Of a stretch of 64,000 nucleotides of DNA, positions 28,001 through 62,352 are shown one piece after another. A program made the position numbers and the translations under genes. Position 1 is the stretch's first letter; every line of letters starts with the position of its first letter. The notes below the pieces were generated by a model. It did not search any database and was not told the origin of the DNA. It saw only the letters and a list, made by a program, of their open reading frames with translations. The DNA lies in the IMG/VR virus record IMGVR_UViG_3300008261_000001, positions 1-64,000 of that record; one strand, 5' to 3'.

Positions 28001-31000
28001 CTAGCGGTTCGTCAGACTCTTTAGTGCAAATAGATCAGGCTTCGGATAAACCGAGCTTTCCATTTTAGCCAAAGTCCCTTGAGTCCGATGTGTCCTCGTT
28101 TTAATCCAAGCCATTCGTGACTCCCTCGCCTGTAAAACACCCAACCCATCATCCAAGTCACTCGGCAAACCTGAGCCCAACTCCCCATAACCCTCCGTTA
28201 TTAAAACAGAGTCCTCTATCACAACACGCCTGTCCAAGACACTTAAACAGGTGTTTGTGTTCACAAAAGGCTTTGAGCTTGTTAAGCCCTTAATGTTGTC
28301 CAACAACAACTCATTAGACGGATGTGTAGGATCCCCCTCACCCACAAGGCTCATGTAATCGTCTGCCTCATAGTCTGCCCAACTGACCATGTCCGTAGGA
28401 AACGACATAAACCTACGCACACGCTCAGACCAAGATAGTGTCCTCTCCCGATAAAATAAGAAGTCTTCAGCTACGCTCTGCACCAACCCATTTTTCATCC
28501 GAACTATCCGATACGAGAAGGGATGTACGCTATCGGTAGTCGTCGAATAAGTGCCTCCCTCCACCCCTGAGGTCACCCTTAAGGGATTTCCTAAATCTCC
28601 ACCAACACTAGGCAAGAGGTTGTAGGTGGACTTATCCTTAGTCCCTACACTACCGCTTACTATGAGGTAATCAAGTCCAACCTCTAGAACACGATACGAA
28701 CCTCTGTTGTCGTCCAACTCATGTGGCTCACCCTCTATGTACCCAACCTCACCTAGCTTGCCCTGATCCCCACGCGGTGGATACCCATACTCTACAGGTG
28801 AACTATCCAATAACGCCCCTTGTGGATCTATCACAAGGTAATCACCCACAAGGACACCAAGATCTAAGAAGTCTGCATTGGTATCCACGAGCTTACCCTC
28901 TAGAGGAACGGATATGCCCTCTTGTGCAGGAGACTCGTAAAGCACCTCAAACCCCTGTGAGAAGTACTCATCAAACGACTGCAACTGAGGAATAAGCCCA
29001 CCCACCCTTGTCTTAATCCTAAAGCTGTAAGCCTCCGCGATAGATGAACCCCTTACCCAACTACAAGTCAACTCCCCATCCACAACCCCCACAACCCTCA
29101 AGTACAACGCCTCTGTTCCGTCCTCCTTGTGGATAAACACATGGTCTCCCATCTGCACCACATTAGAGAAGTTTCCAATTTGGGTATCCGTCCCATCGGT
29201 GTCTTCTTCAATCAGATAGTTCACTTGCTTGGGAGTTAGGACATACACGCCCTCGCCCTCGTCTGTAAGATTTAACACCAAGCCCTCTCTCCCCTCATAA
29301 ACATAACGCAAAGAGGAGACACCCTCAACCACACCCTTTAGGACATCGGTGAACCTACGAGGTCTCCTAGCCACCAACTGCACCCTCTCTGTGAAATCCC
29401 ATGCGGGTAAATCCGATAGGGTGTAATCTATGGGGCTTCTTACATTACTACTGCCGTCTCCAAATACACTCTTGGTTGAATAGTCTCTCACCAACAGCGG
29501 AAAAGACTTATCCAAGTATATTCCACCTAAGACCGTCACGCTCATGGATAATACATCTAGGGGCAATAAGAACCCCTCCCCATAAGAGTTAACATCGGTG
29601 ACTTCACCTAAAGAACCCCACTCTATTCCGTAAACGACTCCGTCTGTACCCCTAAGAGCCGTAAGAGATGACGAGGTATCCCCTCCACCAGCTACACCAA
29701 GTGTAAACTGAATACTTCCACTTAAAGTACAAGGAGCTTCGCTAGGCACAAGGGAGGTCTTAACAAGGTCGAACTTAGCCCTTGTCCCACCTGTAATCAC
29801 TTGCCCATACGCCTCACCCAATATGTCGCTCAGTTCACTGAAGTCCACGACCGTCCCATCTAAATACGCCACGGAGCCATCTACAAAACTAAAGCTCGTC
29901 TCTGTCCTTGAGGCATAAGATATCCGTAGGGCTGATCGACCATAGACGGAGTCGTACACACCCAAAGTCGTAGACATGGGTCTAGATGAAACCCCCACTG
30001 AGTCTAAAATAACAATCAAGTCCCCAACAGAACCAAAGAAAGAGGACAACTCGGTGTTGTCTGTACTCAGTGTGGCTGAGATACCCAATACGCTTAAACC
30101 TGTCACCTTAGGGAATGAAATAACAACAGACTGACTCTGTGTCACAATCTCTCTAATCTCTTCGTCTGCGACACCCTCCGTGTAAAACTCCACTCGGTGA
30201 AGTCCAGAGTTATGCCCAGAGCTAACAACTAAGAAATCTCCCTTCAGAATATTATCCGCAGGTAAAGAGAGATTATGGATAACACCAGATAGGTTATCCG
30301 TAGAGCCCCCACTCAACACCAAGCCCATGTCCCCCTCACCGACATAGATAACACCTTGTTCGTTGACCTCCGACCCTACCATAATGGATAAACCGACCCC
30401 ACTCAAAGCAACCGAGTTTTCACCGCTTGAGCGATATCCGTAGATTAATAACCCATCGGATAAGATTTCTTTAATCTCAAAGGCTGAACCCCCATTTATG
30501 ACGGACGAGTTATTCACATCGGAAGATACGATGTGAGTACCACCCCCACCACCTACGGACTCATAAACAAGAAAACCGCTGTCCAAAACCTCAACCGAGG
30601 ACGAGTAGCTACCTTGTACCTCATAAGAGTCAAATAATGGATAACTCTCCCTAATAGAGACACGATCCGATGGGATATAAGCCGATGGGGATTGGGCTGT
30701 ATAGCCCAAGTGGAAATCCATAAACCAAGCCGAACCCACACCTGTGTAGATGGTCGTACCGCTTGTGGTGGTTAAGCCACCCAAGCCCCCCCAAAATGAG
30801 GAAGCTCTGAATAACCAAGTCTCACCCGTAAAGGCAGGAGCAGGTGGGACATTGGGATTATCTATGGGTGAGTCCACGATGGTGAGCGTGTTGCCCACAT
30901 AGGTGAAGGAAGTCATGTTGTCTGGTGAGTACGCCACATAACCAAAGCCAAACCTTTGGAAACTCACCGTCCAATCTGTCACGCCCCTTGTAAAAGTAAA

Positions 31001-34000
31001 CCGACCATATCGGATTAACCCTCCGTTCAAGTACACATCTAGCCGTATCTCGTTACCTGTGCTACCCTCGCCCGCAAGGTAGTCGAAATAAAGGAAATAA
31101 TCTCTGTACTTGGTGTTGGAAAACACGAGTTCTACAGTCGATACATCGTACTTGCCAGAGCTAGGGATACCCTCGCTCAAGGTCTCCGTTACGCTCACAC
31201 CGACCGCGTCATCGGATAAGTGATAAACGAGAGCGTTATTGACTCTGTAAGAGAGAGAACCACCCGAGTTCGAGGCGGAGAACCTCGGTGGCATGATTTC
31301 AGTTCCGTTTATCCAACCCAACTCCAGAAGCCTGTCCTCGAACACCATGAGGTCTGATTGTCTAGGTGTTTGTACACACTCACCAATCGCTGTGGCTACA
31401 GAGTAGTCATATGTTGTGACAAGGACACCATCCACGCCCTCTACGCCATCGTCCCTAACCTCATCTGGATAAACATATTCAAGGCTCCCATTGTTGTCTG
31501 CTTGTGCTGTAAGTCTCTCTAAATAGGGAGGAACCGTGACGAGAATATCCTTTTCTGTTAAGGGCTTCTTAAAGGGTATAGACTCGTCTCCGTCGTCGTT
31601 TACACCCAATCCCATGAGTGCTGGATACACATAAGGTTCCAAGCTAGTGTTTCCAAAAGTAACCGACCCCTCAAGAGCCGTGTGTGCCGAGGGGACATTT
31701 TGACCTAAGATTTCTTTAATAGGATAGTTAGGGTCAGACCCACTTGGCAAGGTTATGTCGAATATCTCACCCTCTGCCGACCTTAGTCCCACATCGACAC
31801 CCACACGATAAACACTGCTGTCTCCTTCTTCGTCCAAATCGAGGGCAAAGCTCTGAACAATCGTGTCTCCCCTCTTGGGGGCAAAAGCTGAACCAAAGGC
31901 TGTTATTAAGCTACCCTCCAAGACCACCACACACCCATTTACGATTTCTTTAATCCTCGCGTTCCGAGGTTCTCCAGTTAATGAAAACACAGAGTCATAG
32001 GCATACTCCCCCTCGTTCAATACGGGAGAGAAGCCAACACCATCAACACCCAACTGTAGCTTATCCCCCACACGCAACCCATTAAATACCCTTTCTAAAT
32101 TCCCCACCACCACATCGGATAAATCCCCACCCTCAGATAAGAACCTATCTGTTATTGGATAACCAGTAAGTGGGTCTATGGGAAACTCACTCAGTGGGAC
32201 AGCGGATAAGATGAGGCTAGGTCTTCCTACAGAGCTAGGAGCATATTCACTAAACCCATTAGGCGAATACGACACAACTCTGAACCTTGCTCCCCTCTTA
32301 GAGAGAGTTAAGCTGGATATGTTTTTTAATGAACCGAAAGCTGGGTTTTCTACGAGTGCTATGACATCCGTAAAAGTGCTCTCAAAGTCCCTAAAAAAGA
32401 ACAACTCCCCACCGCCTCGATAAGTCATCATCTTAGCCGACTGCGGATACAGCCTCGACTCTACACTCGGTTTCCACAAGGGCGAATAAATGGGAGCGTA
32501 CTCATACTTAATGAATGGATAACCCACACCCATGTCATAAGACATACGCTTTTCATAAGAAACCAAAGCGTAGTCGTCTATCTCGTTCTCTATGAGATTC
32601 CTCTGTGTAGATTTCTTCTTCTTAAAGTCCAAGACGCTCGATACACCCTCTGCATCTATCAAGTATCTTGGATAAATCTCCCTTGTGATGGGGTCTTCTA
32701 ATCCCGCACCACACCACTTGTCTCCCCTCAAAAGCTCGAACTTAAACAACCCATCCGCATCACCCACGACCTTGCCCGTTGTACTTGAGACAAGCTCGTC
32801 CACTGGCTTAATAAAACCATCGTATCTCTTTATCCAATTTCTAGCCACCACATCAGAGGCGAGAAGATCAAAATATCCAATAGACCTCCCTCGCTGAGTG
32901 TTTTCTGTCCGAGTTATCTTCGCCCCAAATCCCCTCTTGTCACTCACCTTGAGACTATCCAATAACTCTCTCTCTACCTCGCCTTCATAGGTTTGTTCAG
33001 CGACTGTTCTGAAGTAAAACACATCTGGGGCATACACCATGCACTTAGCGTAAATCTTCTTGCCCGTGTGCTCAGTCGGAACTCTCCTTTCCGTAAAACT
33101 TAACTCGTACTTCGGATACTCCACCTCGCCTGTGGCTAAAACCCTCTCACTGACCACCCCTTGTGCCGTATGCTTTAAGTAATAACTCTCACCCACAGAT
33201 ACGCCCAAACCACCCAACAAGTTTAACACATCCGAACTCAGAGCGTAGTCAACCCCCTCTACAAGCTCATAACCCAAACCCTCCGACTCCACATAACGGA
33301 TAAGAGTATAGCCCTTATCCGTTAAAACCTTGCTCGATAAAGCTAAAGATTTATCCCCCACTTTAAGCACAGCCCTCATCGACACCAATAACTCACTCAC
33401 ATTGTGTTCTGCCGTTTGCCCCCTCACTCCTAAAATAGTCACCCCATTAATCAAAGACACCGAAAGTACCTCGTAAGCAATACCTGCCAACATCAATAAA
33501 CCACCCACCTTAAATAAATCCCTCAAGTCACCCTCTACAGAAATCTCCCCACCACCCAAACGGCTCTTACAAACAACCCCACTTACGCTCTTGAAAACAT
33601 AACCAGATGCCCTCAAGACACTCACATCACTCGACTTTATCCCATACCTCGCAGGAGGATACACGGATAAGTTTCCATTAGAACCGACCGCAGTCACCCT
33701 AAAGATATGTCCAGATAGATTTAACAAATCATCTACAGCCACTAAACCACTCGGTATCCAACTCGAAATCGTACTGCTACCAATACTTATCTCTAAGTCC
33801 TCAACCTCTTTTATTCCAGTAGATACCCTAACCGAATACTCCCCACCCATAGACCTCGTCACATAATAACTAACACGCACATCCCCCACCGCGTTCACAT
33901 AAATAATCCTGTCACTCGTTATGCTCGCACCAGATGTGACAATAGATGCCCCGTCATACAAAGTAAATAAATCACTATCCAAGACCACCCCTCGCTCCAA

Positions 34001-36697
34001 CCCCCCATAACTGTAAACTCCGCTCTCCAATAAAACCGCACTCTCCTCCCTAACTAAAAATAAAACACCCTCCAAGACACGCTCGCTCTCCGTAAAAGGA
34101 ATATAAGACACCTCAACACCCACACCAGACTCTAAAGGAGACTCAAAAGATATAGCACCAGTGCTAACCTCATATCTCACACGCCCCCTGTCCAATAACT
34201 CCATCAACTCTAAAGCAACACCCTCACCAAATGGACTCGATAAGTCGTCCAATGACGCACTCACCTCCGCCCTGTCCGTTAAAACATCTCTCGGAACCCC
34301 CTTGTAATAACACACACCCACCCAACTGCTATCCAATACCCCATCGCTCTCAAAATATATCCGTCCACTCACCGAGTCCCTCGTAAAACCATAACCATCT
34401 ACAATAACACCCTCCTCATAGGTGACACCATCAACCTCTAATCTGTAATAACCATCTCGCCTCTGAATATCCGATATGTAAAAATCACCCAATAACTCCC
34501 TCTTTAAAATCACTAAGGGATAATAAACCGAACCCCCAACCTCCCTCAAATATAAACTAGATGTAGGATGCACATTGGATAAATCCATACCCCAATTGCG
34601 AATAATGTACACCTCACAACTACGCCTCTCACTGTAAAGCCTCTCCCAACACTCCCCCAACACTAAATCAGAACCACCCACACCCCCACCCTCATGCTCC
34701 TCCCATATGTTAGAGGATTCATCTATCCTATCCATACTCGATAAAACCCCATCCCCTGAGATAACACGCCTCCATAAAACCACCCCAGATGTTATCTGCC
34801 TAACAAAGTTCCCCTCCGCCTTATCCAAATCCTCTAAACGACCACTACCCACCACATTAAGCCAACCCCTCAGAAATCTTAAACGCCCCCCCAACCCATA
34901 CAAAACATCAAAATCTACACCCTCACTCAAAACCTCACCACCTATAGACAAACCACCCACCAACGACAAAACTCCACCACTCGTCTCTAAACCATCCAAT
35001 ACCCCACGCACATAACCACTACGAGAAACAACACCCAACCATGTAATCGAGTTATCCATATCCAAACCATACTCAATGTCCTCCCCCTTCGTTAAATAAC
35101 CACCACCCTCCACCCTAAAGTGCCTGCTACCCGTTGCGTCCGCCCCACCCCTAAATAAAGACACCTCACCCAAACCACTCAGCAGACTTAAAGATAAACC
35201 CCCACCACCGACCACACCCACCTCCTCGTCATCATAACTTACATAACCACCCACACTAAGTGAACCCACACTTAAAAAGACACCACCCGCCCAACGCTCA
35301 TGTGGCACTAAACCCAACTTATCCAAATCCCCAGACACAGACTCCCCTAAGACCCTTATGTGTCCATAACGATCCACATCCACTAAACCCTCCCCCCCTA
35401 CAAGATCCCCCCCTACCCACGACACCAAATCCCCATCAACTAAAATACTCCCACTGCCCGATAAAGGCTTGCTCGATACCATACCCAAACCCACCCTGTC
35501 CATACCCACTAACCCCGTGCCGTACTTGGCCCCCGTTAAATCCACTCGCCCCCCTGTGTACACCCTCCCAAAGTCCCCTGAGCCCAACGATACATACGCC
35601 ACACCCACCTTACGCTTCTTAAACTCAGGTACATCCTCTACATACTCACACAATAAAACATCCCCACTCAATAACCTCACATACGAACCCAATAAATAAC
35701 CCCTAAAGAAACCACGCCTCACCCCCTCACCCAATCCGTCCTTCTCCCACTCCCAACCACTCACCCCAAATGAACCCTCCCCTATTACCCCACTTTCCAA
35801 CTCACTCTCCGACTCCATAAACACACGATCACTACATAACGCTAACCCCTCATACACCAACTCGTAATCCCCCGACCAATACACACGCCCAGCCTCCCTA
35901 TCAAACTCAAAATCAGTCAAGAAATCCCCCACACCACCCACTCGCCTCAATAATGGAAACTCATTCAAACGAGGACAAGGAGATAAATAATCTCCTGACC
36001 TTAACGCACTACCGCCCACTAAAGATCCCCTGATTAAGATTATCCCCAAACCCCTGTCCTCGTCACTCAACGAACCCCACCTTAACTCACTACCCTCACT
36101 ATCCATTAACCCATATGAAGAAGATAAATCACCACCCCCAACAAGAATGTCCTCACCCACTGTTAGCCTCTTCGAACCCACCACCAACTCGTCACCTAAC
36201 CTCAAACCCACTAACCCCCCATCACCCACTACACCAAATGACTCCCCACGACCCCCACCCAATAACTTCCATGTCGAACCCTCCCACTTAAAACGCTCCC
36301 TCACACCATCGTTTGCCGTCCACCAATAACTCACCCCCTCCAAATATACCAACCCATCCGGCTCACCCCCCTCTGATTCTGCTACTCCTAAACCACTATC
36401 CAATACCTCTAAACTCTCCCCCCCACGAGTCGCTGATCTTATCCTATTCCCACCAAGCTCCACACCCCCATACCAAATACCACCCCCTACAGATACCCAA
36501 CTGATCTCCCTCGATACATCACCCACTGCACCATCCCCCGCAGATATCCATAAGACTTCCCCCTCCCCCCTTATAGCCTCATAGTCATAACCCAATAAAT
36601 CCACCCCTCCCCTCACAATACGACTGCCCAAACCCGTCAGCGTGTTGTTCCCATCCCCAGACCTTACATCTAGCCTCAGTAATGTTAATGTACTCAT
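28001..36697 (-). CDS. Giant protein (2898 aa), probable baseplate/tail-associated structural protein
   Basis: Uninterrupted 8.7-kb ORF; recurring L.EG(V/E)D(Y/F/I) motifs; function inferred. Confidence 0.75.
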   Translation of the reverse strand: MSTLTLLRLDVRSGDGNNTLTGLGSRIVRGGVDLLGYDYEAIRGEGEVLWISAGDGAVGDVSREISWVSVGGGIWYGGVELGGNRIRSATRGGESLEVLDSGLGVAESEGGEPDGLVYLEGVSYWWTANDGVRERFKWEGSTWKLLGGGRGESFGVVGDGGLVGLRLGDELVVGSKRLTVGEDILVGGGDLSSSYGLMDSEGSELRWGSLSDEDRGLGIILIRGSLVGGSALRSGDYLSPCPRLNEFPLLRRVGGVGDFLTDFEFDREAGRVYWSGDYELVYEGLALCSDRVFMESESELESGVIGEGSFGVSGWEWEKDGLGEGVRRGFFRGYLLGSYVRLLSGDVLLCEYVEDVPEFKKRKVGVAYVSLGSGDFGRVYTGGRVDLTGAKYGTGLVGMDRVGLGMVSSKPLSGSGSILVDGDLVSWVGGDLVGGEGLVDVDRYGHIRVLGESVSGDLDKLGLVPHERWAGGVFLSVGSLSVGGYVSYDDEEVGVVGGGGLSLSLLSGLGEVSLFRGGADATGSRHFRVEGGGYLTKGEDIEYGLDMDNSITWLGVVSRSGYVRGVLDGLETSGGVLSLVGGLSIGGEVLSEGVDFDVLYGLGGRLRFLRGWLNVVGSGRLEDLDKAEGNFVRQITSGVVLWRRVISGDGVLSSMDRIDESSNIWEEHEGGGVGGSDLVLGECWERLYSERRSCEVYIIRNWGMDLSNVHPTSSLYLREVGGSVYYPLVILKRELLGDFYISDIQRRDGYYRLEVDGVTYEEGVIVDGYGFTRDSVSGRIYFESDGVLDSSWVGVCYYKGVPRDVLTDRAEVSASLDDLSSPFGEGVALELMELLDRGRVRYEVSTGAISFESPLESGVGVEVSYIPFTESERVLEGVLFLVREESAVLLESGVYSYGGLERGVVLDSDLFTLYDGASIVTSGASITSDRIIYVNAVGDVRVSYYVTRSMGGEYSVRVSTGIKEVEDLEISIGSSTISSWIPSGLVAVDDLLNLSGHIFRVTAVGSNGNLSVYPPARYGIKSSDVSVLRASGYVFKSVSGVVCKSRLGGGEISVEGDLRDLFKVGGLLMLAGIAYEVLSVSLINGVTILGVRGQTAEHNVSELLVSMRAVLKVGDKSLALSSKVLTDKGYTLIRYVESEGLGYELVEGVDYALSSDVLNLLGGLGVSVGESYYLKHTAQGVVSERVLATGEVEYPKYELSFTERRVPTEHTGKKIYAKCMVYAPDVFYFRTVAEQTYEGEVERELLDSLKVSDKRGFGAKITRTENTQRGRSIGYFDLLASDVVARNWIKRYDGFIKPVDELVSSTTGKVVGDADGLFKFELLRGDKWCGAGLEDPITREIYPRYLIDAEGVSSVLDFKKKKSTQRNLIENEIDDYALVSYEKRMSYDMGVGYPFIKYEYAPIYSPLWKPSVESRLYPQSAKMMTYRGGGELFFFRDFESTFTDVIALVENPAFGSLKNISSLTLSKRGARFRVVSYSPNGFSEYAPSSVGRPSLILSAVPLSEFPIDPLTGYPITDRFLSEGGDLSDVVVGNLERVFNGLRVGDKLQLGVDGVGFSPVLNEGEYAYDSVFSLTGEPRNARIKEIVNGCVVVLEGSLITAFGSAFAPKRGDTIVQSFALDLDEEGDSSVYRVGVDVGLRSAEGEIFDITLPSGSDPNYPIKEILGQNVPSAHTALEGSVTFGNTSLEPYVYPALMGLGVNDDGDESIPFKKPLTEKDILVTVPPYLERLTAQADNNGSLEYVYPDEVRDDGVEGVDGVLVTTYDYSVATAIGECVQTPRQSDLMVFEDRLLELGWINGTEIMPPRFSASNSGGSLSYRVNNALVYHLSDDAVGVSVTETLSEGIPSSGKYDVSTVELVFSNTKYRDYFLYFDYLAGEGSTGNEIRLDVYLNGGLIRYGRFTFTRGVTDWTVSFQRFGFGYVAYSPDNMTSFTYVGNTLTIVDSPIDNPNVPPAPAFTGETWLFRASSFWGGLGGLTTTSGTTIYTGVGSAWFMDFHLGYTAQSPSAYIPSDRVSIRESYPLFDSYEVQGSYSSSVEVLDSGFLVYESVGGGGGTHIVSSDVNNSSVINGGSAFEIKEILSDGLLIYGYRSSGENSVALSGVGLSIMVGSEVNEQGVIYVGEGDMGLVLSGGSTDNLSGVIHNLSLPADNILKGDFLVVSSGHNSGLHRVEFYTEGVADEEIREIVTQSQSVVISFPKVTGLSVLGISATLSTDNTELSSFFGSVGDLIVILDSVGVSSRPMSTTLGVYDSVYGRSALRISYASRTETSFSFVDGSVAYLDGTVVDFSELSDILGEAYGQVITGGTRAKFDLVKTSLVPSEAPCTLSGSIQFTLGVAGGGDTSSSLTALRGTDGVVYGIEWGSLGEVTDVNSYGEGFLLPLDVLSMSVTVLGGIYLDKSFPLLVRDYSTKSVFGDGSSNVRSPIDYTLSDLPAWDFTERVQLVARRPRRFTDVLKGVVEGVSSLRYVYEGREGLVLNLTDEGEGVYVLTPKQVNYLIEEDTDGTDTQIGNFSNVVQMGDHVFIHKEDGTEALYLRVVGVVDGELTCSWVRGSSIAEAYSFRIKTRVGGLIPQLQSFDEYFSQGFEVLYESPAQEGISVPLEGKLVDTNADFLDLGVLVGDYLVIDPQGALLDSSPVEYGYPPRGDQGKLGEVGYIEGEPHELDDNRGSYRVLEVGLDYLIVSGSVGTKDKSTYNLLPSVGGDLGNPLRVTSGVEGGTYSTTTDSVHPFSYRIVRMKNGLVQSVAEDFLFYRERTLSWSERVRRFMSFPTDMVSWADYEADDYMSLVGEGDPTHPSNELLLDNIKGLTSSKPFVNTNTCLSVLDRRVVIEDSVLITEGYGELGSGLPSDLDDGLGVLQARESRMAWIKTRTHRTQGTLAKMESSVYPKPDLFALKSLTNR

Positions 36698-36753
36698 CTC
36701 TGTCTACACCCCTCATGTTAAAGTCTAAGATTATAATACCCTAACCTATCCCA

Positions 36754-37326
36754 CTATCCCACTATCCTTAATGGCATAGGCACACTCACAGGCACTATAG
36801 AAGGAACACCACTCAACGCCCCTACTGCCACACCACCACCAAAATAACCCGTTAAACCCAAACCCAATCCCTCCGCTAACTGATCCACAAAACCACCCAC
36901 CAAACCCACTCCCCTCAACCCCAACCTTAAATCATCCGCAAGACGACCCCCAAATACCACACCAACACCTGTAAATGTACCCACCACTGGATAAGGCAAC
37001 CCATAAGAACCCACCGTAAACACCGCCCCCCTCAAACCCAACTCCACACCCAACGCTAACTGACCCACCGATACACCCACCAAACCCACTCCCCTCAAAC
37101 CACTCTCCAATACCCCCACAGGACTCGACGATAAACTGAATGTACCCATAGGTACTCCACTACCTCCCACACCCAAACCCACACATAACACCTGCCCCCT
37201 CAATAAACCCAACCTCAAACCCTCCTCTATACCCGTACTTATACGCAACCACTCCCCACCCACTAAACCAACCCCAACTCCAGCATTATATACCAACCCC
37301 CCCAATACACCCCTCATTAAACTCAT
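36754..37326 (-). CDS. Gly/Val/Leu-rich hypothetical protein
   Basis: 190-aa ORF with GAGGGG RBS, first gene of the leftward operon; extreme composition bias. Confidence 0.65.
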   Translation of the reverse strand: MSLMRGVLGGLVYNAGVGVGLVGGEWLRISTGIEEGLRLGLLRGQVLCVGLGVGGSGVPMGTFSLSSSPVGVLESGLRGVGLVGVSVGQLALGVELGLRGAVFTVGSYGLPYPVVGTFTGVGVVFGGRLADDLRLGLRGVGLVGGFVDQLAEGLGLGLTGYFGGGVAVGALSGVPSIVPVSVPMPLRIVG

Positions 37327-37397
37327 GTCGCACCCCCTCCTCTACATATGTTGTTATCCATCCTATCTGCACTAAATACACACATAAACAAATAACA

Positions 37398-37735
37398 CCA
37401 TATACCCCTATAAGCATACACCCATATACACCCATATACCCCTATAAGCATATGCGACCATATACCCCTACTTCGACCACATACCCTATAAGCATATATG
37501 ACCACACCCCCAACCGCAGAAGACTCACCCAACCACGACCCCATCACCTATCACCGTACTCCGACTAAGCATATATGACCCTATGTGCTTATGTGAATAT
37601 ATGACCCTATGTGCTTATATGACCATATGTGCTTATATGACCATATGTGCTTATATGACCATATGTGCTTATATAAGACCCCATTTTTAACATTTAATAT
37701 TTAACATATTTTAACATTTAACATTCAACAAAAGT
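37398..37735. repeat. Iteron-like repeats plus AT-rich tract (origin-like island 1)
   Basis: CCATATACCCCTATAAGCATA-like x3-4 (37398-37503); 18-bp ATATGACCATATGTGCTT x4 (about 37600-37671); TTTAACA-rich AT tract 37684-37735. Confidence 0.85.
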
Positions 37736-37769
37736 TAATACACATAGATGGATACTTTCTGTTTATGGT

Positions 37770-37817
37770 GGTGAACACACGAATACCGCTCGTAGAAGCT
37801 GTATCGGTGTGTTCACC
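37770..37817. other. Inverted repeat / hairpin
   Basis: GGTGAACACAC...GTGTGTTCACC arms. Confidence 0.8.
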
Positions 37818-37872
37818 CTCCAGAAGACAAACCTGCATCCAAAATGCGACTGAAAAAACAAAAACGGATTAA

Positions 37873-37926
37873 AACCCACCCCCCACACCTACTAAAAGCA
37901 ACAAGGTAGGTGTGGGGGGGTGGGTT
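37873..37926. terminator. Strong hairpin, possible terminator of the leftward gene 37968..38204
   Basis: AACCCACCCCCCACACCTAC...GTAGGTGTGGGGGGGTGGGTT stem; short T-run follows on the minus strand. Confidence 0.6.
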
Positions 37927-37967
37927 CTCTCTAGGGGGTCTCTCACACCCCCACCTATCTCGCTCTC

Positions 37968-38204
37968 TTAGCCGATGACCACATAGTCTGCGTTAATCTT
38001 GTCCATGTGGTTGAGGATGTCGTTGTTCTCGTTGCGGTAGTAGCCTGTGTAGTAGTTTCCCATCTCCCACTCCACCACGAGCTTCTGACCGAGGATGTTT
38101 TCGAGGTCAGCGTAAGCGTTGTCGGTGAGGGTGAAGTAGATGGTGGTGGTGTTGGGCTGGCGGTAGATGACTGAGGTCTCTGCGTGGAGCTTGTTCTTTA
38201 ACAA
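37968..38204 (-). CDS. Small hypothetical protein
   Basis: TTG start after AAGGA; downstream of the cassette at 38277. Confidence 0.7.
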   Translation of the reverse strand: MLKNKLHAETSVIYRQPNTTTIYFTLTDNAYADLENILGQKLVVEWEMGNYYTGYYRNENNDILNHMDKINADYVVIG

Positions 38205-38276
38205 GGCTGTTGTCCTTAGGCGAGTGGGTTAGGCGAGTGGGTTAGGTTAGGTTGTTGTCTCTCTCGCTCTGCCCCA

Positions 38277-38306
38277 CTAATAGACGAGCTTTGGGACTTG
38301 GGATAA
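38277..38306 (-). promoter_or_regulatory. Promoter-like cassette (18-nt spacer)
   Basis: TTATCC-N18-TATTAG; divergent pair with 38348. Confidence 0.75.
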
Positions 38307-38347
38307 CAAAATGGAAAGTTTTTTCACCGAAGATTTTTCTCGAAAGA

Positions 38348-38376
38348 TTATCCCAAATTGGAAAGTCCTTTATTAG
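38348..38376 (+). promoter_or_regulatory. Promoter-like cassette
   Basis: TTATCC-N17-TATTAG. Confidence 0.75.
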
Positions 38377-38462
38377 TGGGGGACAGCCTAGAGAGCGAGA
38401 AGCACAGATACCAACCCACACAGATACCAACCCACACCCCTTCATACGGAGGCATGATAGAT

Positions 38463-38696
38463 ATGTACAAGGTAGTTAAGATTCACAGGTACAACGCTCC
38501 CCTCAGCGGATTTTCTCACAACACAGTTTCTCAACATAAGAAGAGGGATCTGGCGGAAAAAGTCTTGGATAAGTGTAAGGCTTCCGACCCCACAGGTGAG
38601 TACGCCATCTACACATACACCTCCAGATCTACAGAGCGGAGGAGTACAGAGTGTGGTCTACAGATGCTCAACAACATCTTAAATGGAAACTTCTAA
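38463..38696 (+). CDS. Small hypothetical protein
   Basis: GGAGG upstream of ATG 38463. Confidence 0.65.
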   Translation: MYKVVKIHRYNAPLSGFSHNTVSQHKKRDLAEKVLDKCKASDPTGEYAIYTYTSRSTERRSTECGLQMLNNILNGNF

Positions 38697-38740
38697 GAGG
38701 GTAGGGCGGACAGCCCCCCAAGCGATCCGCCTCAAGGGAG

Positions 38741-38804: not shown

Positions 38805-39194
38805 ATGATGTACGCAGGTGATTTGAGTTTTGTTCTCAGCTACAAGAACTTCAACGCTCTCATTGCTCAGGGTGAGGGTCATGTGACCTTTACCAACGAG
38901 AAGGGCGAGAGGGTGAGGGTGTTCCATGCACAAGTGGAGAGGGGTGTGTATTGGGACATGGAGACGAACCACACGGTGGCTTGTCAGTCTGGGTGGATGG
39001 GGGCGATTGCCCTAGCTGACACGGATGTGGAGTTCATGGAGGCGGTCAAGGGGGGGATGGTGGACGGCTCAAGTAAACTAGAGAGGTGTCAGCTAGAGAA
39101 TGGGTACTTGAGCTTGGACGCGGTGGAGTTTGATCTCACACAGATGGCGGACGAGGAGGATCCCTTGTGGGAGACGCTAGAGCTAGATCACTAA
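38805..39194 (+). CDS. Hypothetical protein, 129 aa
   Basis: ORF with AAGGGA upstream. Confidence 0.7.
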   Translation: MMYAGDLSFVLSYKNFNALIAQGEGHVTFTNEKGERVRVFHAQVERGVYWDMETNHTVACQSGWMGAIALADTDVEFMEAVKGGMVDGSSKLERCQLENGYLSLDAVEFDLTQMADEEDPLWETLELDH

Positions 39195-39814: not shown

Positions 39815-40189
39815 ATGGATGAGCGTTCGAATAGGATAAGCACTTTGTTTGGTGACTTGGGTGTTCTTTCTACAGCGTTAGAGAAGACATTCCCTTACAG
39901 GTGCAGGGTGTGTGATGGTCGTGGGGGGGAGGTGACTTGGGTAGATTGTGAGCCTGTGGTGAAGGCGTGTACGAGTTGTTATTACAACGAGCTTGATCCT
40001 CTGAACATAAATCTCAGGATGATCTTTAAGGGTTATTTGCCGACTTATGGGTGGTGGTCTTGGATAAGTCCTACAGCAGGGTTCGACTTACTGGACGCGG
40101 AGGGTACAGATAGGGTGGATTTACTGACAGACGAGATAGACCGTCTGAGGGCGGAGTTTAATGGGCTTATCGTGATATTGGATAACTAA
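39815..40189 (+). CDS. Zn-finger protein (CxxCxGxGG...CxxC), paralog family B
   Basis: CRVCDGRGG, CTSC, LDPLNINL, ISPTAGFDLLD. Confidence 0.8.
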   Translation: MDERSNRISTLFGDLGVLSTALEKTFPYRCRVCDGRGGEVTWVDCEPVVKACTSCYYNELDPLNINLRMIFKGYLPTYGWWSWISPTAGFDLLDAEGTDRVDLLTDEIDRLRAEFNGLIVILDN

Positions 40190-40231
40190 CTCGTGATATT
40201 GGATAACTAACTCGTGATATTGGATAACTAA
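40171..40231. repeat. 21-bp tandem repeat CGTGATATTGGATAACTAACT x~3
   Basis: Exact copies at 40171, 40192 and 40213; each holds TTGGATAA. Confidence 0.95.
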
Positions 40232-40942: not shown

Positions 40943-41776
40943 GTGGGGATAGTGGATAAGTCAATAAACAAACACTTACGAGAGGTTTTAGAGATGAAGT
41001 ATGATCTAAAGAGATTTAAGAACCTTTATGAGATGGGGGCGACACGCTCCTCCCTTGAGGCTGAGTTTAAGGTGTTGCCTATCACTATTGATAGGCGGAT
41101 ACTTGCTTTGGGGTTGAAGCCCCGTGGGGTTGATTTTCTCAAGGGCAGGGTGGGGCGGTTAAAGGAGCTTTTAGGGGCTGGGTATCACCTACAGACCATC
41201 TCTAAGGAGTTGATGGTGCCTTTGTCTTCTCTAACCTTCTTCATGAAGGAAGAGGGGTTAGAGAAGACAAAGAGGGTCACAGAGGCTCGTAGGGCTAGGG
41301 TAGCCCAAGCGGTGGAGTTGAGGGGGAAGAATATGACCTTGAGGGATATTGGGTCAGTTATGGGTATGACGATGGAGGGGGTTCGTCTGTTATTGCTCGA
41401 TGGTGGTATGAGCGGACGGATAGGTTGTCATAAGGAGGGAGTGAGGAAGAAGAGGGAGCAGTTTATTAAGAGGTATAAAATGGATTTGTGGGAGGGTTTG
41501 GCTTATGGAAAGACGCTCACGCAGATAGCGAAGGAGCTTGGTCTTTCGCGGAGTCAGATCACTAAGCTCTCAAAAGAGGTGGGTGGTTCTGAGATGATGG
41601 ATATAGCGAAGGAGTTGAAGTTTGAGTATCTCAGTAAGCTCTATCAAGAGGGATTATCGGTTCAACAGATAGCGGATATGTACGAAATGAACGCTATGGG
41701 CTTGTATGTGTTTCTAAGGCGGAGGGGTAATAAGTTTAGGAAAGCTGGTGGGCGTAGGGGGAAGCGGACTCAGTAA
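40943..41776 (+). CDS. Multi-HTH DNA-binding protein with a sigma-70 region-4-like HTH
   Basis: TLRDIGSVMGMTMEGVR, TLTQIAKELGLSRSQI, SVQQIADMY, HLQTISKEL. Confidence 0.75.
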   Translation: MGIVDKSINKHLREVLEMKYDLKRFKNLYEMGATRSSLEAEFKVLPITIDRRILALGLKPRGVDFLKGRVGRLKELLGAGYHLQTISKELMVPLSSLTFFMKEEGLEKTKRVTEARRARVAQAVELRGKNMTLRDIGSVMGMTMEGVRLLLLDGGMSGRIGCHKEGVRKKREQFIKRYKMDLWEGLAYGKTLTQIAKELGLSRSQITKLSKEVGGSEMMDIAKELKFEYLSKLYQEGLSVQQIADMYEMNAMGLYVFLRRRGNKFRKAGGRRGKRTQ

Positions 41777-45498: not shown

Positions 45499-46107
45499 CT
45501 ATTGAGGGATAACCGACCAATCCAAAATGTACTCGATGAGGGTAGTTAAGAAGTCTTTCCTATCTGCCTCGTAGTCGATGTAGTGAGCGTGTTCCCATAG
45601 GTCTATGGTCAATAACGGCACATGACCCCTCATCATGGGTGTGTTCTGATTGAGCGTTGTGTACACCCTCAAGGTGTTCGTGTGTGGGACTAAAACAAGC
45701 CACACCCAACCCGAGCCAAAATGACTCGTACCCTCTTGGATAAGTTTATCCTTTAACTGCTCGTATCCACCGAAGGTGTTGGACACCGCAGTTTGAAACC
45801 AAAGGGGCGTGTCTATGTAAGACCCAGGGCTTGGGGACAAACACCTCCAATAGAAGTCGTGATTCCACACCCCTCCCCCAAAGTCTATCACCGACTGCTT
45901 TAACTCCAAAGGTATCCAATGTGGATTGGATAACACCTCATAGAGACCACCTAGACGGTCGAGGAGTGTGGGGTCTCCCTTTAGGGCTTTGTTGAGCTTG
46001 TCTACATACCCTTTATGGTGAGTCCCATGATGGAGTCTCATAGCTTTCTCAGATAGTACAGGCTCTAGGGCATCGTATGCGTAGGGCAAGGGCTTCAGCT
46101 TAATCAT
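45499..46107 (-). CDS. sod: Fe/Mn superoxide dismutase
   Basis: LPYAYDALEP, HHGTHHKGY, NHDFYW, FGSGWVWL, DLWEHAHY with all four metal ligands. Confidence 0.97.
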   Translation of the reverse strand: MIKLKPLPYAYDALEPVLSEKAMRLHHGTHHKGYVDKLNKALKGDPTLLDRLGGLYEVLSNPHWIPLELKQSVIDFGGGVWNHDFYWRCLSPSPGSYIDTPLWFQTAVSNTFGGYEQLKDKLIQEGTSHFGSGWVWLVLVPHTNTLRVYTTLNQNTPMMRGHVPLLTIDLWEHAHYIDYEADRKDFLTTLIEYILDWSVIPQ

Positions 46108-47975: not shown

Positions 47976-48000
47976 TGTCTCTCTCCTTCGTGAGTTAAGT

Positions 48001-48066
48001 GAGCTTAGGGGCTAAGTGAGCTTAGGGGCTAAGTGAGCTTAGGGGGCTAAGTGAGATTAGGGGCTA
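48001..48066. repeat. 17-bp tandem repeat GAGCTTAGGGGCTAAGT x~4
   Basis: Units at 48001, 48018, 48035 and 48053. Confidence 0.95.
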
Positions 48067-53634: not shown

Positions 53635-53695
53635 GGGGGTTAAGGGCTAGAGGGTAAGGGGCTAGTGGGTAAGGGGCTAGAGGGTAAGGCTAGAG
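53628..53695. repeat. About 15-bp G-rich tandem repeat GGGTAAGGGGCTAG(A/T) x~4
   Basis: Between convergent stop codons. Confidence 0.9.
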
Positions 53696-54366
53696 ATGAA
53701 GGCGTTCATCTGAGAGACTGCATCTTCGGATAACAGATACTCCCTAGCATAGACGCTATCGCTCTGATCTTGTCGATTGGATAAATCATCTCCGACTTCG
53801 CTTTTAAGGTTGGAGGTCTTTTGCCAAACAAACCGAGAGTCCACCGAGGTCTCAAAGCCTATCCAAGAGAACATCTCTAGTAGGTGAGAAGAGACTTGTT
53901 GAGCATGAGCGTTATGCCCAGAGACGATTACACCGCACTTCTTTCCGTCTAAGGGGTTTTGTTCTCCATAGACGGATTTCCTATTCTCTAGGGTGTTGAG
54001 TCGCTCGATGATTTTTTGCAGTAGTGCCGAGTGGGATCCCCAACGAACGCTTGTGGAGAACAACACCGCGTCCGCCCAAGCGATGCCGTCATAAATAACG
54101 GGCATTTCATCTACTCCCCCATAAGCCTTTGGGTTTTCAGCGGAGAGCTTATGAGCCCAACAGCGATATTGACCTGCATCGAACGAAGCACAGTTGAACT
54201 TTCCGTCCGCATAACAGCTTAGGTTATCCACAATGTGGAGGTCGTTTGCGTTGATGTATCTTATCTCATGCCCTAGAGCTTTAAGCTCTTGTAAGGCGTA
54301 GGACAAGAAAGCACGGCTAGTAGATTTCTTAGCGTGTGTGGTCGTACTGATAGCTAGGATGTTCAT
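53677..54366 (-). CDS. Flavodoxin-fold NAD(P)H-dependent FMN reductase / iron-sulfur flavoprotein-like
   Basis: ILAISTT, Cys cluster CY...C...CW, DEMPVIY...ADAVLFSTSVRWGSHSALLQKIIERL, GKKCGVIVSG. Confidence 0.88.
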   Translation of the reverse strand: MNILAISTTTHAKKSTSRAFLSYALQELKALGHEIRYINANDLHIVDNLSCYADGKFNCASFDAGQYRCWAHKLSAENPKAYGGVDEMPVIYDGIAWADAVLFSTSVRWGSHSALLQKIIERLNTLENRKSVYGEQNPLDGKKCGVIVSGHNAHAQQVSSHLLEMFSWIGFETSVDSRFVWQKTSNLKSEVGDDLSNRQDQSDSVYAREYLLSEDAVSQMNAFISSLTL

Positions 54367-58858: not shown

Positions 58859-58887
58859 TTATCCCAACCCAGAAACTCCCTTATTAG
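58859..58887 (+). promoter_or_regulatory. Promoter-like cassette
   Basis: TTATCC-N17-TATTAG. Confidence 0.75.
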
Positions 58888-58931
58888 TGGGTCACAGCGA
58901 CAGAACCAACACACTCCGAAAGGACTCAAAT

Positions 58932-60059: not shown

Positions 60060-60171
60060 GGGGTAGGTGGAGTAGGGGTAGGGGTCAAAGTCGCTTAAAA
60101 TAGCCCTTTAAACGCTTATAGCGTAAATACGATAAGAAGCTGATTCTCTAGTTTAAAACTTTTAATAAAAG

Positions 60172-60200
60172 TTATCCCAAGTTCCAAACCCACTTATTAG
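60172..60200 (+). promoter_or_regulatory. Promoter-like cassette
   Basis: TTATCC-N17-TATTAG. Confidence 0.75.
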
Positions 60201-60252
60201 TGGGGGAGGCAGAGACAGAACGAGACAACACACTCCGCAGGAGCAGTAGTTT

Positions 60253-61041: not shown

Positions 61042-61058
61042 ACAAGGATAAAAGAAAA

Positions 61059-61694
61059 ATGGACAAGACGATTATTCAGTACGCTCAAGCTGTCCACCGC
61101 TCCATTCATGGAGCACCCCTCCCCACCTTTAAGGGATTGTTCAACCCCTTCGATGATATTAACCCCAACACCCTTAAAGAACTTGTAGACAACGCACCCC
61201 TCGAAGCTATCGAGGCAGAGTTCGAAGCGAAACTAAACGAGGATTGGGATCTTAAACTCAAAAATAAACTCCCCCTCTCAAATATGCCCGTTAGAGTCAC
61301 CAAAGGCAATAAAGACATGAGAGGTATAGACGGTTGGGTCGTCCATGACCAACAGCGGGCTGACGACCCCGACCGTAAAGCTATGTTCGTCTACGACTTT
61401 AAAAACTCCAAAGGTGGTTGGGTCGCTGACCACGCTGTTAAAATCCGCACCCCCAAATGGAACGAATGGGAAACCGAGGTGCAAACCTACATCACTCAAT
61501 GTGAGAGTATCTCCCACCTCTTTACGAGAGGAAAGCGTGTTAGACATAAAACCACAGGCGAAATCGGTCTCGTACTCTTCGACTGCTCCCTCAACCCAAA
61601 CTGGAACGGAAACGGATTCCACCAATGTAAAGTCGAATGGCAACCAACCTACTCCACCTACTACATCTCACCCCTACTCCTCGATATCATCTAA
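61059..61694 (+). CDS. Hypothetical protein, possibly two SH3/KOW-like modules
   Basis: VRVTKG..GIDGWV and GKRVRHKTTGEIGLV. Confidence 0.65.
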   Translation: MDKTIIQYAQAVHRSIHGAPLPTFKGLFNPFDDINPNTLKELVDNAPLEAIEAEFEAKLNEDWDLKLKNKLPLSNMPVRVTKGNKDMRGIDGWVVHDQQRADDPDRKAMFVYDFKNSKGGWVADHAVKIRTPKWNEWETEVQTYITQCESISHLFTRGKRVRHKTTGEIGLVLFDCSLNPNWNGNGFHQCKVEWQPTYSTYYISPLLLDII

Positions 61695-62310: not shown

Positions 62311-62348
62311 GGTGTATTGGGCATAAGGTGTATTGGGCATAAGGTGTA
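62311..62348. repeat. 16-bp repeat GGTGTATTGGGCATAA x2.4
   Basis: Exact copies at 62311 and 62327. Confidence 0.9.
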
Positions 62349-62352
62349 GTAT

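What the first reader, a model, noticed from the sequence alone, without database searches (positions are those of the whole stretch)
37323..37960. Origin-like island 1 at a sharp C-rich to G-rich switch
Seen: about 640 bp without a credible gene, holding two classes of direct repeats (about 21-bp CCATATACCCCTATAAGCATA; 18-bp ATATGACCATATGTGCTT x4), an AT-rich TTTAACA-repeat tract (37684-37735) and two long hairpins. The plus strand is C-rich to the left and G-rich to the right (39001-39060: 28 G, 10 C). Established: iterons plus an AT-rich unwinding element at a skew inversion is the standard origin signature. Inference: a replication origin.
Basis: partly seen in the sequence, partly recalled or inferred. 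Interest (0 to 1): 0.7.

Follow-up and report, generated by a model that had tools for sequence, protein, structure and literature searches.

The report
Repeat-rich control region, not proven origin
A 640-bp gene-free stretch of a 290-kb freshwater jumbo phage does hold origin-like repeats and the most easily melted DNA in the genome, but it is most likely the expanded promoter and operator region of a giant-protein operon, and the strand-composition switch beside it belongs to that operon, not to replication.

Summary
The 37,327-37,967 stretch has no credible gene. It holds an 18-nt tandem array found nowhere else in the genome, a second repeat class with the same core in the opposite orientation, the least stable 50- and 80-bp windows of the whole 290-kb genome, and two strong hairpins. 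Independent metagenomes carry it, with two array units fewer in some.

The origin inference is weak. The skew switch is the 5' edge of a 4.4-kb block whose coding strand has only about 9% C. That block covers the 190-aa gene and the first 3.6 kb of a 2,898-aa gene. Relatives keep it whatever lies upstream.

With gene orientation corrected and such blocks excluded, there is no replichore-type inversion here. The global cumulative skew minimum is at 62,147. Relatives have a plain promoter region at the matching place. About 20 other intergenic tandem arrays exist, mostly just upstream of genes. I found no initiator gene and no DnaA box.

Best reading (0.5): upstream-gene terminator, conserved hairpin, AT tract, amplified promoter/operator units, then a roughly 235-nt leader.

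Rivals: a transcription-primed (R-loop) origin (0.2) and an iteron origin (0.12).

The parts
28001..36697 (-). Giant gene (2,898 aa), second gene of the operon that starts at the island. Its first 3.6 kb are C-depleted.
   Evidence: ORF. Homologues of 2,871-3,063 aa in freshwater metagenome contigs at 35-65% identity. The N-terminal 900 aa are conserved at 62% and 49% identity. GC skew falls from 0.67-0.70 to 0.07-0.29 along the gene.
33100..37560 (-). C-depleted block. The coding (minus) strand is 8.8% C, 39.6% G, 32% T. C at four-fold sites is 3.4%.
   Evidence: The same block occurs in L003, L002, L010, L011 and L012, and is absent in L013 and L009.
36754..37326 (-). First gene of the operon: 190 aa, rich in Gly, Val and Leu. 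GC3 skew 0.98. GAGGAGG ribosome-binding site upstream.
   Evidence: 57% identical to the 189-aa gene of L003. Genes of 182-198 aa sit at the same place in L002, L010, L011, L012 and the P0006 contig.
37327..37560 (-). Inferred 5' leader of about 235 nt, still C-depleted on the minus strand. It holds the class-1 repeats.
   Evidence: Composition break at about 37,560. No transcript data exist.
37398..37500 (.). Class-1 repeats: CCATATACCCCTATAAGCATA, 2 exact copies plus about 2 degenerate ones.
37566..37625 (-). Two overlapping sigma-70-like promoter matches inside the array: TGGTCA-18-TATATT and TTCACA-18-TATGCT. The second would start transcription at about 37,560, where C depletion begins.
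   Evidence: consensus match only, 2 found against 3.9 expected in shuffles.
37570..37680 (.). Class-2 array: 18-nt unit TATGTGCTTATATGACCA, 4.7 copies plus 2 degenerate units. Each unit holds the palindrome CATATG.
   Evidence: Two units are missing in runs X2 and X4. L003 has an 18-nt x 2.3 array with the shared core ATATGGT at the matching place.
37684..37735 (.). AT-rich tract (87% A+T), built from TGTTAAA/TTTAACA units.
   Evidence: Least stable 50- and 80-bp window of the 290-kb genome. TRF period 7.
37770..37817 (-). Hairpin 2: 21-nt arms, apex GCUUCUACGAGC, no T-run.
   Evidence: L003 has a hairpin with the same apex (GCUUCUGCGAGCGG) on a different, still paired lower stem, followed by TATCCAT as here. 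Sequence similarity alone is about 2.5 sd above shuffles.
37845..37926 (-). Hairpin 1 plus a U-rich tail on the minus strand. Inferred intrinsic terminator of the upstream 78-aa gene.
   Evidence: Minus-strand reading. -41.1 kcal/mol, z -6.5. The stem is kept while the loop is inverted in runs X3-X5. The simple terminator scan missed it because the loop is 13 nt.
37968..38204 (-). 78-aa gene that ends just before the island. It has ordinary composition.
   Evidence: No family found.
38276..38377 (.). Divergent pair of the promoter-like motif TATCCCAA-N13-TTATTAGT. This is where transcription actually diverges, 300 bp to the right of the island.
   Evidence: at least 13 intergenic copies in the genome, most lying 10-72 nt before the nearest downstream start codon. 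The module recurs at 12 or more places.

Best explanation
The island is the intergenic control region of a conserved operon: a 190-aa gene, the 2,898-aa giant gene and three further genes, all on the minus strand.

Read in the direction of that operon it holds, in order:
1. the intrinsic terminator of the upstream 78-aa gene (hairpin 1 plus U-run);
2. a conserved hairpin with a fixed apex, followed by TATCCAT;
3. an AT-rich tract made by tandem duplication of a 7-mer;
4. an array of tandemly amplified 18-nt units that carry -35/-10-like hexamers and CATATG dyads, which I read as promoter and/or operator copies;
5. a leader of about 235 nt with the inverted class-1 copies;
6. the ribosome-binding site and start codon.

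The repeats are lineage-specific expansions of a short ancestral cis element. They still vary in copy number in nature.

The 'C-rich to G-rich switch' is the upstream edge of a block in which the sense strand of this operon almost lacks C. It belongs to the operon, not to a replication fork.

Shown: the anatomy, the uniqueness of the array, the terminator-like geometry, conservation of the block and of the operon, and the lack of a replichore signal.

Inferred: that the units are promoters or operators, the transcription start near 37,560, and which protein binds. The two multi-HTH proteins encoded at 40943-41776 and 55270-56553 are candidates only.
For: Position. The island lies between two minus-strand genes, not at the point where transcription diverges, which is at 38,276-38,377.

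Terminator geometry.

Composition break at 37,560, immediately downstream of a sigma-70-like match at the gene-proximal end of the array.

Relatives.
- L002, L010 and L012 have only a 215-500-nt promoter region at the orthologous place, with a conserved TAGAATGTACTAAG and a hairpin.
- L003 has a hairpin-2 homologue and an 18-nt x 2.3 array sharing ATATGGT.
- L011 has a single ATGGTAGGTT.

Genome habit. At least 16 of 23 intergenic tandem arrays lie 5-160 nt upstream of a start codon, for example 62302-62348 (5 nt before the ATG), 40170-40231 (10 nt) and 38216-38246 (12 nt).

Copy-number polymorphism.

Skew. The block occurs in six phages whatever lies upstream. Orientation-corrected skew shows no inversion at the island. 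The global cumulative minimum is at 62,147.
Against: No transcript data: no RNA run was listed that holds the locus.

The host is unknown, so sigma-70-type matches are weak. The scan found fewer matches than in shuffles.

An ordinary promoter region does not need the genome's single most meltable 50 bp next to its best iteron-like array. That pairing is what origins look like.

The extreme C depletion downstream is not explained by ordinary transcription.

Similarity of the upstream regions between this phage and L003 is modest, about 2.5 sd above shuffles.

Gene calls outside the window are my own crude ORF calls.
Confidence: 0.5

Rival explanations
1. Transcription-primed (R-loop) origin, working like T4 oriF/oriG, the T7 primary origin or ColE1. 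A promoter in the island fires leftward. The very G-rich, C-poor RNA stays hybridised to the template. The AT tract helps opening, and the RNA primes leftward leading-strand synthesis. The displaced minus strand is single-stranded for long periods, which is why C is purged from it over 4.4 kb.
For: The genome's least stable DNA lies in the island.

Immediately downstream on the transcribed side, GC skew is 0.5-0.7 and declines with distance. C at four-fold sites is 2-5% in four phages. High GC skew downstream of a promoter is the known sequence correlate of R-loops.

The block is conserved across the family, which an initiation zone would be.

A second island (61,695-62,352) precedes a second such block (62,353-63,535, skew 0.74) and holds the global cumulative skew minimum.

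T4 origins are defined as a promoter plus an A+T-rich unwinding element with persistent R-loops (PMC3016281).
Against: In T4 the unwinding element lies downstream of the promoter. Here the AT tract lies upstream of the only promoter-like matches.

L002, L010 and L012 have the block but no AT tract or array.

In those relatives the 5' leader itself is not C-poor.

Four-fold sites show C replaced mainly by G. That is not the C-to-T, A-to-G pattern of plain deamination, so exposure as single strand is inferred, not shown.

An RNA-level reason is equally open: an mRNA without C cannot form G-C pairs.

No coverage or R-loop data exist.
Confidence: 0.2
2. Iteron-type origin, working like ori-lambda or iteron plasmids. 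An initiator binds the 18-nt repeats, melts the adjacent AT tract and loads the DnaB-like helicase.
For: 4.7 near-identical 18-nt direct repeats, unique in the genome, lie directly beside the most meltable 50 bp, with a palindrome next to it.

Iteron number also varies between related lambdoid phages, 4 against 6 (PMC7466680).

The phage encodes a DnaB-like helicase at 1279-2823.
Against: No initiator family in the ten flanking ORFs or in other window ORFs. Lambda's origin lies inside its initiator gene.

No perfect or one-mismatch DnaA box.

No replichore-type skew inversion, and the global minimum lies elsewhere.

The architecture is absent at the orthologous site of relatives.

About 20 comparable arrays exist elsewhere, and a second origin-like region at 133.2-135.0 kb sits beside a RecD2-like helicase.

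The units abut at an 18-nt period (about 1.7 helical turns) rather than the roughly 22-nt in-phase spacing I recall for plasmid iterons (own knowledge).
Confidence: 0.12
3. Recombination or rearrangement hotspot, or a packaging site, rather than a control element. The repeats and hairpins would mark an inversion endpoint or a site cut during packaging.
For: In L002 and in the P0006 contig, a block of three genes (386-248-213 aa) lies co-oriented just upstream of the giant operon. Here its homologues lie at 58.9-61.7 kb on the other strand. One inversion with ends in island 1 and island 2 restores that order.

L003 has yet other neighbours.

The terminator loop is inverted in some populations.

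One contig of X5 starts at 37,709 joined to adapter sequence.
Against: No long inverted homology between islands 1 and 2; only 9-16-nt motif matches.

No recombinase core domain was found. There are only HTH matches.

The adapter junction is a single contig. A similar one occurs at 25,293 inside a gene, so it is probably a library artefact.

The depth step lies at 38.25-38.4 kb, not in the island.
Confidence: 0.08

Closest known systems
ori-lambda and iteron origins of lambdoid phages and plasmids
   Same: A run of 4-6 direct repeats of about 18-19 bp lies directly beside an AT-rich tract. Copy number differs between related phages (PMC7466680). There is a palindrome nearby (own knowledge for lambda).
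   Different: No initiator gene contains or adjoins it. The units are contiguous at an 18-nt period. Relatives lack the architecture at the same place. There is no skew support.
[quoted passage not shown]
   Same: An AT-rich, easily melted element lies next to promoter-like sequence. The non-template strand downstream bears a strong strand-specific composition mark (PMC3016281, for the T4 definition).
   Different: The order of promoter-like matches and AT tract is reversed relative to T4. The skewed zone is 4.4 kb of coding sequence, not about 100 bp. Nothing has been shown experimentally.
Tandemly repeated promoter or operator regions with AT-rich upstream elements in bacteria and phages
   Same: It lies between a terminator and the first gene of an operon. 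The repeated units carry -35/-10-like hexamers and dyads. There is AT-rich DNA upstream. Copy number is polymorphic.
   Different: The region is unusually long at 640 bp. It has two inverted classes of one core motif and is followed by a transcription unit almost devoid of C on the sense strand.
R-loop-prone, GC-skewed promoter-proximal regions (CpG-island promoters, switch regions) and the C-poor displaced strand of vertebrate mitochondrial DNA
   Same: The strand asymmetry is of comparable size, starts at a promoter-like site and decays with distance.
   Different: It occurs in a phage, inside conserved coding sequence. C is replaced mainly by G at four-fold sites.

Membership tests
Iteron-type replication origin (lambda or plasmid type) | Three or more direct repeats of about 17-22 bp | tested here: met
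   18 nt x 4.7 at 95% match, unique in the genome.
Iteron-type replication origin (lambda or plasmid type) | Adjacent AT-rich unwinding element | tested here: met
   37683-37733 is the least stable 50-bp window of 290 kb.
Iteron-type replication origin (lambda or plasmid type) | Cognate initiator gene containing or adjoining the repeats | tested here: not met
   Pfam, PHROGs and NCBIfam give no Rep, O or DnaA-like family for the flanking ORFs. Most of those ORFs have no family at all, so a novel initiator cannot be excluded.
Iteron-type replication origin (lambda or plasmid type) | Initiator binds the repeats and the region replicates autonomously | not testable with these tools
   Needs footprinting and a minireplicon test.
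Origin marked by replication-linked skew inversion | Orientation-independent skew changes sign at the site, and the cumulative minimum lies there | tested here: not met
   r = +0.053 on the left and -0.005 on the right. Global minimum at 62,147, local minimum at 38,090. The switch is gene-linked in six phages.
T4 oriF/oriG-type transcription-primed origin | Promoter with an A+T-rich unwinding element downstream of it | tested here: inconclusive
   An AT tract is present. The only promoter-like matches lie downstream of it on the transcribed strand. The host and phage promoter rules are unknown.
T4 oriF/oriG-type transcription-primed origin | Persistent R-loop that primes leading-strand synthesis | not testable with these tools
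   There is only the indirect mark of a C-depleted non-template strand.
Intrinsic terminator (hairpin 1) | G+C-rich stem followed by a U-run, directly after a stop codon on the same strand | tested here: met
   Stem of 21 nt, -41.1 kcal/mol. Tail UUUUAAUCCGUUUUUGUUUUUU. It starts 41 nt after the stop codon of the 78-aa gene.
Promoter or operator region of an operon | Transcription start inside the region, directed into the operon | not testable with these tools
   No RNA run holds the locus. Only consensus matches and the composition break at 37,560 are available.
Promoter or operator region of an operon | The same relative position serves as the promoter region in relatives | tested here: met
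   A conserved promoter-like block lies upstream of the 18x-aa gene in L002, L010 and L012. Shared elements occur in L003.
Known RNA family | Match to an Rfam model at gathering score | tested here: not met
   Only sub-threshold microRNA-type hairpin hits.

The most novel reading that the evidence does not exclude
A family of freshwater jumbo phages starts replication, or at least keeps a long-lived three-stranded structure, at the promoter of its giant-protein operon. A C-free, G-rich transcript stays hybridised for kilobases, and the displaced coding strand has been purged of cytosine down to 2-5% at silent sites. Island 1, and island 2 with its own C-free block, would then be R-loop initiation zones, and the iteron-like arrays would be the loading or regulatory sites.
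Probability: 0.2. Interest if true: 0.8.

Novelty: new variant of a known kind. Interest (0 to 1): 0.5.

Why it matters
No origin has been located in this family of uncultured freshwater phages, and here sequence signatures alone would have misled. The case shows that a sharp skew switch can be a gene-linked feature rather than a fork signature.

The more unusual thing lies next to the island: 4.4 kb of conserved coding sequence with about 9% C on the sense strand and about 3% at four-fold sites. It is kept across phages whose giant proteins are only 35-38% identical. Whatever enforces it is not a described property of phage genes as far as I could find. Candidates are single-strand exposure in R-loops, a C-specific nuclease or deaminase, or a need for structure-free mRNA. 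If the cause is an R-loop used for priming, the origin question for this family becomes directly testable.

Tried and rejected
- Rfam scan of 36,500-38,700 at E <= 1: only chance microRNA-like hairpin hits.
- Phage GenBank records: no DNA match to 36-40 kb.
- IMG/VR: no relatives found with the giant protein's C-terminal part or the 78-aa protein.
- Exact 17-mer of the iteron in IMG/VR: two single, unrelated matches, taken as chance.
- RNA runs: none was listed that holds the locus, so no transcription start or transcript evidence.
- ORF 37323-37547 as a gene: rejected. It is repeat-derived and frameshifted in natural variants.
- DnaA boxes: none in the island.
- Long homology between islands 1, 2 and 3, or terminal inverted repeats of a mobile element: none.
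- Long-range pairing of class-1 with class-2 repeats: weak and not in the centroid fold. The array alone gives z -2.3.
- The abundant word TTATCCAATA as a polar, origin-pointing signal: no strand polarity along the genome.
- Pure deamination as the cause of the block: not supported at four-fold sites, where C is replaced mainly by G.
- Avoidance of the MazF site ACA: rejected, 42 observed against 15 expected.
- Contig-depth comparison across the island: a 1.4-1.8x step exists but lies at 38.25-38.4 kb, in the repeated promoter module. It rests on assembler word depths and on populations with mosaic variants, so I did not use it.
- Distant complete relative LR745208.1: its giant gene has no skew block, so it is uninformative for the island.
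- PDB sequence search with the 742-aa neighbour: nothing.
- Contig ends: no overlap, so topology and termini are unknown.

Full report
**Context.** The window is the first 64 kb of a single 290,179-bp contig: 47% G+C, 13 tRNA genes, a DnaB-like helicase, an SNF2 helicase and a family-A DNA polymerase. Near-identical DNA occurs in about 20 lake and other freshwater metagenome runs from many studies. The closest GenBank phage is an uncultured 485-kb phage, with 42% identity in the helicase. It is therefore an uncultured freshwater jumbo phage with an unknown host. Gene positions outside the listed ORFs come from my own simple ORF caller.

Between the start codon of a 190-aa gene (37,326, minus strand) and the stop codon of a 78-aa gene (37,968, minus strand) there is no credible gene. 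The one ORF, 37323-37547, is made of repeat sequence and is frameshifted in natural variants.

- *Class-2 array.* The 18-nt array at 37,590-37,674 has 4.7 copies at 95% match. Two further degenerate units extend it to 37,570. It is the best short-period tandem repeat of the whole genome, and its unit occurs nowhere else.
- *Class-1 repeats* (37,398-37,500). These carry the same core, TATAAGCA(C)ATAT, in the opposite orientation.
- *Half-sites.* The island holds 20 CATAT(A/G) half-sites per 300 bp, against a genome mean of 0.22.
- *AT tract.* It is the least stable 50-bp and 80-bp window in 290 kb.
- *Hairpins.* Both fold far better than shuffles, with z of about -6.5.
- *Independent support.* Contigs of independent runs span the island. 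Two runs lack exactly two array units, so the array is real and polymorphic, not an assembly artefact.

**Anatomy in the direction of the flanking genes (minus strand).**

1. The 78-aa gene is driven by a copy of a promoter-like motif, TATCCCAA-N13-TTATTAGT. The motif occurs at 13 or more intergenic sites, most 10-72 nt before the nearest downstream start codon. Its divergent partner lies 70 bp away. Transcription therefore diverges at 38,276-38,377, not inside the island.
2. The 78-aa gene ends at 37,968. It is followed by hairpin 1 and a U-rich tail, an intrinsic-terminator geometry. In three runs the loop is inverted while the stem is kept.
3. Hairpin 2 comes next and has no U-run. The closest relative with DNA, L003 (giant protein 62-65% identical), has at the matching place a hairpin with the same apex (GCUUCU-R-CGAGCGG) on a different but still paired lower stem. 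It is followed by TATCCAT, as here. By sequence alone this similarity is only about 2.5 sd above shuffles.
4. Then come the AT tract, the array, a spacer, the class-1 copies, a GAGGAGG ribosome-binding site and the start codon.

**The skew switch is a property of the operon.**

*Composition of the block.* The plus strand is C-rich on the left because the minus (coding) strand of 33,100-37,560 has 8.8% C and 39.6% G. GC skew is 0.67-0.70 over the first 1.8 kb of the giant gene and falls to 0.07-0.29 beyond 3.6 kb. It is seen at all three codon positions, and GC3 skew in the 190-aa gene is 0.98.

*The region still codes for protein.* The N-terminal 900 residues are 62% and 49% identical to two relatives.

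*The block recurs in relatives.* It begins at the 18x-aa gene in L003, L002, L010, L011 and L012. Four of these have co-oriented upstream genes of ordinary composition. It is absent in the more distant L013 and LR745208.1.

*Common denominator.* C at four-fold sites is 2-5%, against 16-26% elsewhere, and it is replaced mostly by G. This is not a plain deamination pattern.

*A second block.* Another block (62,353-63,535, skew 0.74, three small genes, two of them paralogues) follows a second repeat-rich island.

**Replication-type skew.** I removed the blocks and corrected for gene orientation.

| Region | Plus-strand component r | 95% interval |
|---|---|---|
| 0-28 kb | +0.053 | 0.032 to 0.077 |
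| 37.9-62 kb | -0.005 | -0.067 to +0.060 |
| 63.5-90 kb | +0.12 (GC3: +0.28) | 0.076 to 0.161 (GC3: 0.171 to 0.346) |

A bidirectional origin at 37.6 kb predicts a negative value on the left and a positive one on the right. The global cumulative minimum is at 62,147. At the island there is only a local minimum, at 38,090.

**Comparative evidence on the island itself.**

- *Plain promoter region in three relatives.* L002, L010 and L012 have, upstream of the 18x-aa gene, a 215-500-nt region with the upstream gene's terminator, a conserved TAGAATGTACTAAG (-10-like) and a hairpin. They have no array and no AT tract.
- *Shorter arrays or single copies in others.* L003 has an 18-nt x 2.3 array (ATGAGATATGGTAGGTTC) 20-60 nt before the start codon, sharing ATATGGT with this phage's unit. 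L011 has a single ATGGTAGGTT.
- *A likely expansion.* The AT tract looks like an expansion of a TGTTAAA unit beside a TTGTTTTAT-like element present in L003 and L010.
- *What this suggests.* The island is a lineage-specific expansion of an ordinary control region.
- *Genome habit.* At least 16 of 23 intergenic tandem arrays lie 5-160 nt upstream of a start codon.
- *Promoter-like matches.* The gene-proximal, degenerate end of the array gives sigma-70-like matches whose predicted start, about 37,560, is where C depletion begins. This is a consensus match in a phage of unknown host, so it is a lead and not a finding.

**What speaks for an origin all the same.** The unique best array lies next to the genome's most meltable DNA and a palindrome. 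That is the ori-lambda layout (PMC7466680). An AT-rich unwinding element beside a promoter defines the R-loop-primed T4 origins (PMC3016281). The C-purged non-template strand would fit a long-lived R-loop or D-loop.

Against this, several things are missing or point the other way:

- No initiator family was found in the neighbouring ORFs.
- There is no DnaA box.
- The relatives lack the architecture.
- A third origin-like region, with the second least stable DNA and several arrays, lies at 133.2-135.0 kb beside a RecD2-like helicase.
- The order of AT tract and promoter-like matches is the reverse of T4's.

**Rearrangement.** In L002, and by gene sizes in the P0006 contig, homologues of 58,887-61,694 lie co-oriented 3 kb upstream of the giant operon. 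Here they are on the other strand, 22 kb away. A single inversion with ends in islands 1 and 2 restores that order. The two islands share only short motifs.

**Depth.** Contig word depth is 1.4-1.8 times higher to the right of 38.4 kb than at 22.5-28.4 kb in four runs. The step lies at the repeated promoter module, where alternative junctions also occur, and not in the island. It rests on assembler depths only. I draw nothing from it.

| Reading | Confidence |
|---|---|
| Expanded control region of the giant-gene operon | 0.5 |
| R-loop-type origin | 0.2 |
| Iteron-type origin | 0.12 |
| Recombination or packaging site | 0.08 |

The remainder is unassigned. The unusual item is the conserved C-free block beside the island.

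Noticed in passing
window 61695-63535: Second repeat-rich island. It has a 29-nt x 4 array at 62007-62110, G-rich inverted copies at 61705-61785, a 16-nt x 2.9 array 5 nt before the ATG, and an AT-rich stretch. Three small genes follow with sense-strand GC skew 0.74. The global cumulative skew minimum (62,147) and the only orientation-corrected skew step lie here. It is the second densest place for CATAT(A/G).
   Followed up: partly
window 33100-37560 (minus strand); L003 3800-9500; L002 8001-11000; L010, L011, L012 from position 5500: Conserved block of coding sequence almost free of C on the sense strand (about 9% C overall, 2-5% at four-fold sites, replaced mainly by G). It decays over 1.5-5 kb from the operon start. 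The cause is unknown.
   Followed up: partly
genome 133247-134963 (outside the window; locus L007 1750-3460): Largest non-coding region of the genome, with five different tandem arrays, stretches nearly free of G on one strand, and the second least stable DNA. It lies between a minus-strand gene and a RecD2-like helicase gene, near a UvrD-like helicase and a ribonucleotide reductase.
   Followed up: partly
window 38276-38305 (-), 38349-38377 (+), 40671, 49522, 49627, 52467, 52909, 58860, 60173; genome 128446, 164689, 166267, 278531: Promoter-like motif TATCCCAA-N13-TTATTAGT. Most copies lie 10-72 nt before the nearest downstream start codon, and they are concentrated at 38-62 kb. The surrounding 50-90-bp module is repeated at 12 or more places, and metagenome contigs show alternative junctions at it (38324, 39223, 39268).
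   Followed up: partly
whole genome: The word TTATCCAATA/TATTGGATAA occurs 77 times as an exact 10-mer. Its core (A/T)TGGATA occurs 693 times, ten times the expectation. It is on both strands equally, mostly inside genes, with a frame preference but no polarity along the genome. It resembles the first seven bases of a DnaA box.
   Followed up: partly
whole genome; e.g. window 5287-5345, 38216-38246, 40170-40231, 47996-48066, 62302-62348: Short tandem arrays (12-29 nt, 2-4 copies, each with its own sequence) sit 5-160 nt upstream of many start codons. This is an unusual genome-wide habit.
   Followed up: partly
window 37893-37905: The 13-nt loop of the terminator hairpin is replaced by its reverse complement in runs X3, X4 and X5, while the stem is kept. 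This is a hairpin loop inversion segregating in nature.
   Followed up: no
window 37.5-62 kb against L002 1703-8004: Gene order differs from relatives by an inversion of about 24.5 kb whose ends fall in islands 1 and 2. L003 has yet other genes upstream of the operon, including pentapeptide-repeat proteins.
   Followed up: partly
window 40943-41776 (+) and 55270-56553 (-): Two proteins with several helix-turn-helix domains. They have sub-threshold similarity to the CRISPR repeat-binding protein Cbp1 and to IS630 or resolvase HTH domains. They are candidate binders of tandem DNA repeats.
   Followed up: no
genome 183147-233344 (tRNA genes): The 13 phage tRNAs (12 anticodon species) read mostly codons without C (GGR, GUR, UUR, AGR, GAR, AAR). 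They can read 53.6% of codons in the C-depleted blocks, against 42.9% elsewhere.
   Followed up: partly
window 36000-37700: Public assemblies of four runs break into 150-550-nt contigs with lower depth across the C-depleted region. The contig of the closest relative (L001) ends inside the 190-aa gene. This composition seems hard to sequence or assemble.
   Followed up: no
window 37709 (run X5): One contig begins at 37,709, inside the AT tract, joined to Illumina adapter sequence. A similar junction occurs at 25,293 inside a gene, so it is probably a library artefact rather than a DNA end.
   Followed up: no
genome 128841-131516: The ribonucleotide reductase large subunit has a LAGLIDADG domain inserted in the barrel, which suggests an intein or homing endonuclease.
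   Followed up: no
window 45499-46107 and 53677-54366: Fe/Mn superoxide dismutase and an FMN reductase-like gene lie in the variable 38-62-kb segment. They look like auxiliary metabolic genes.
   Followed up: no
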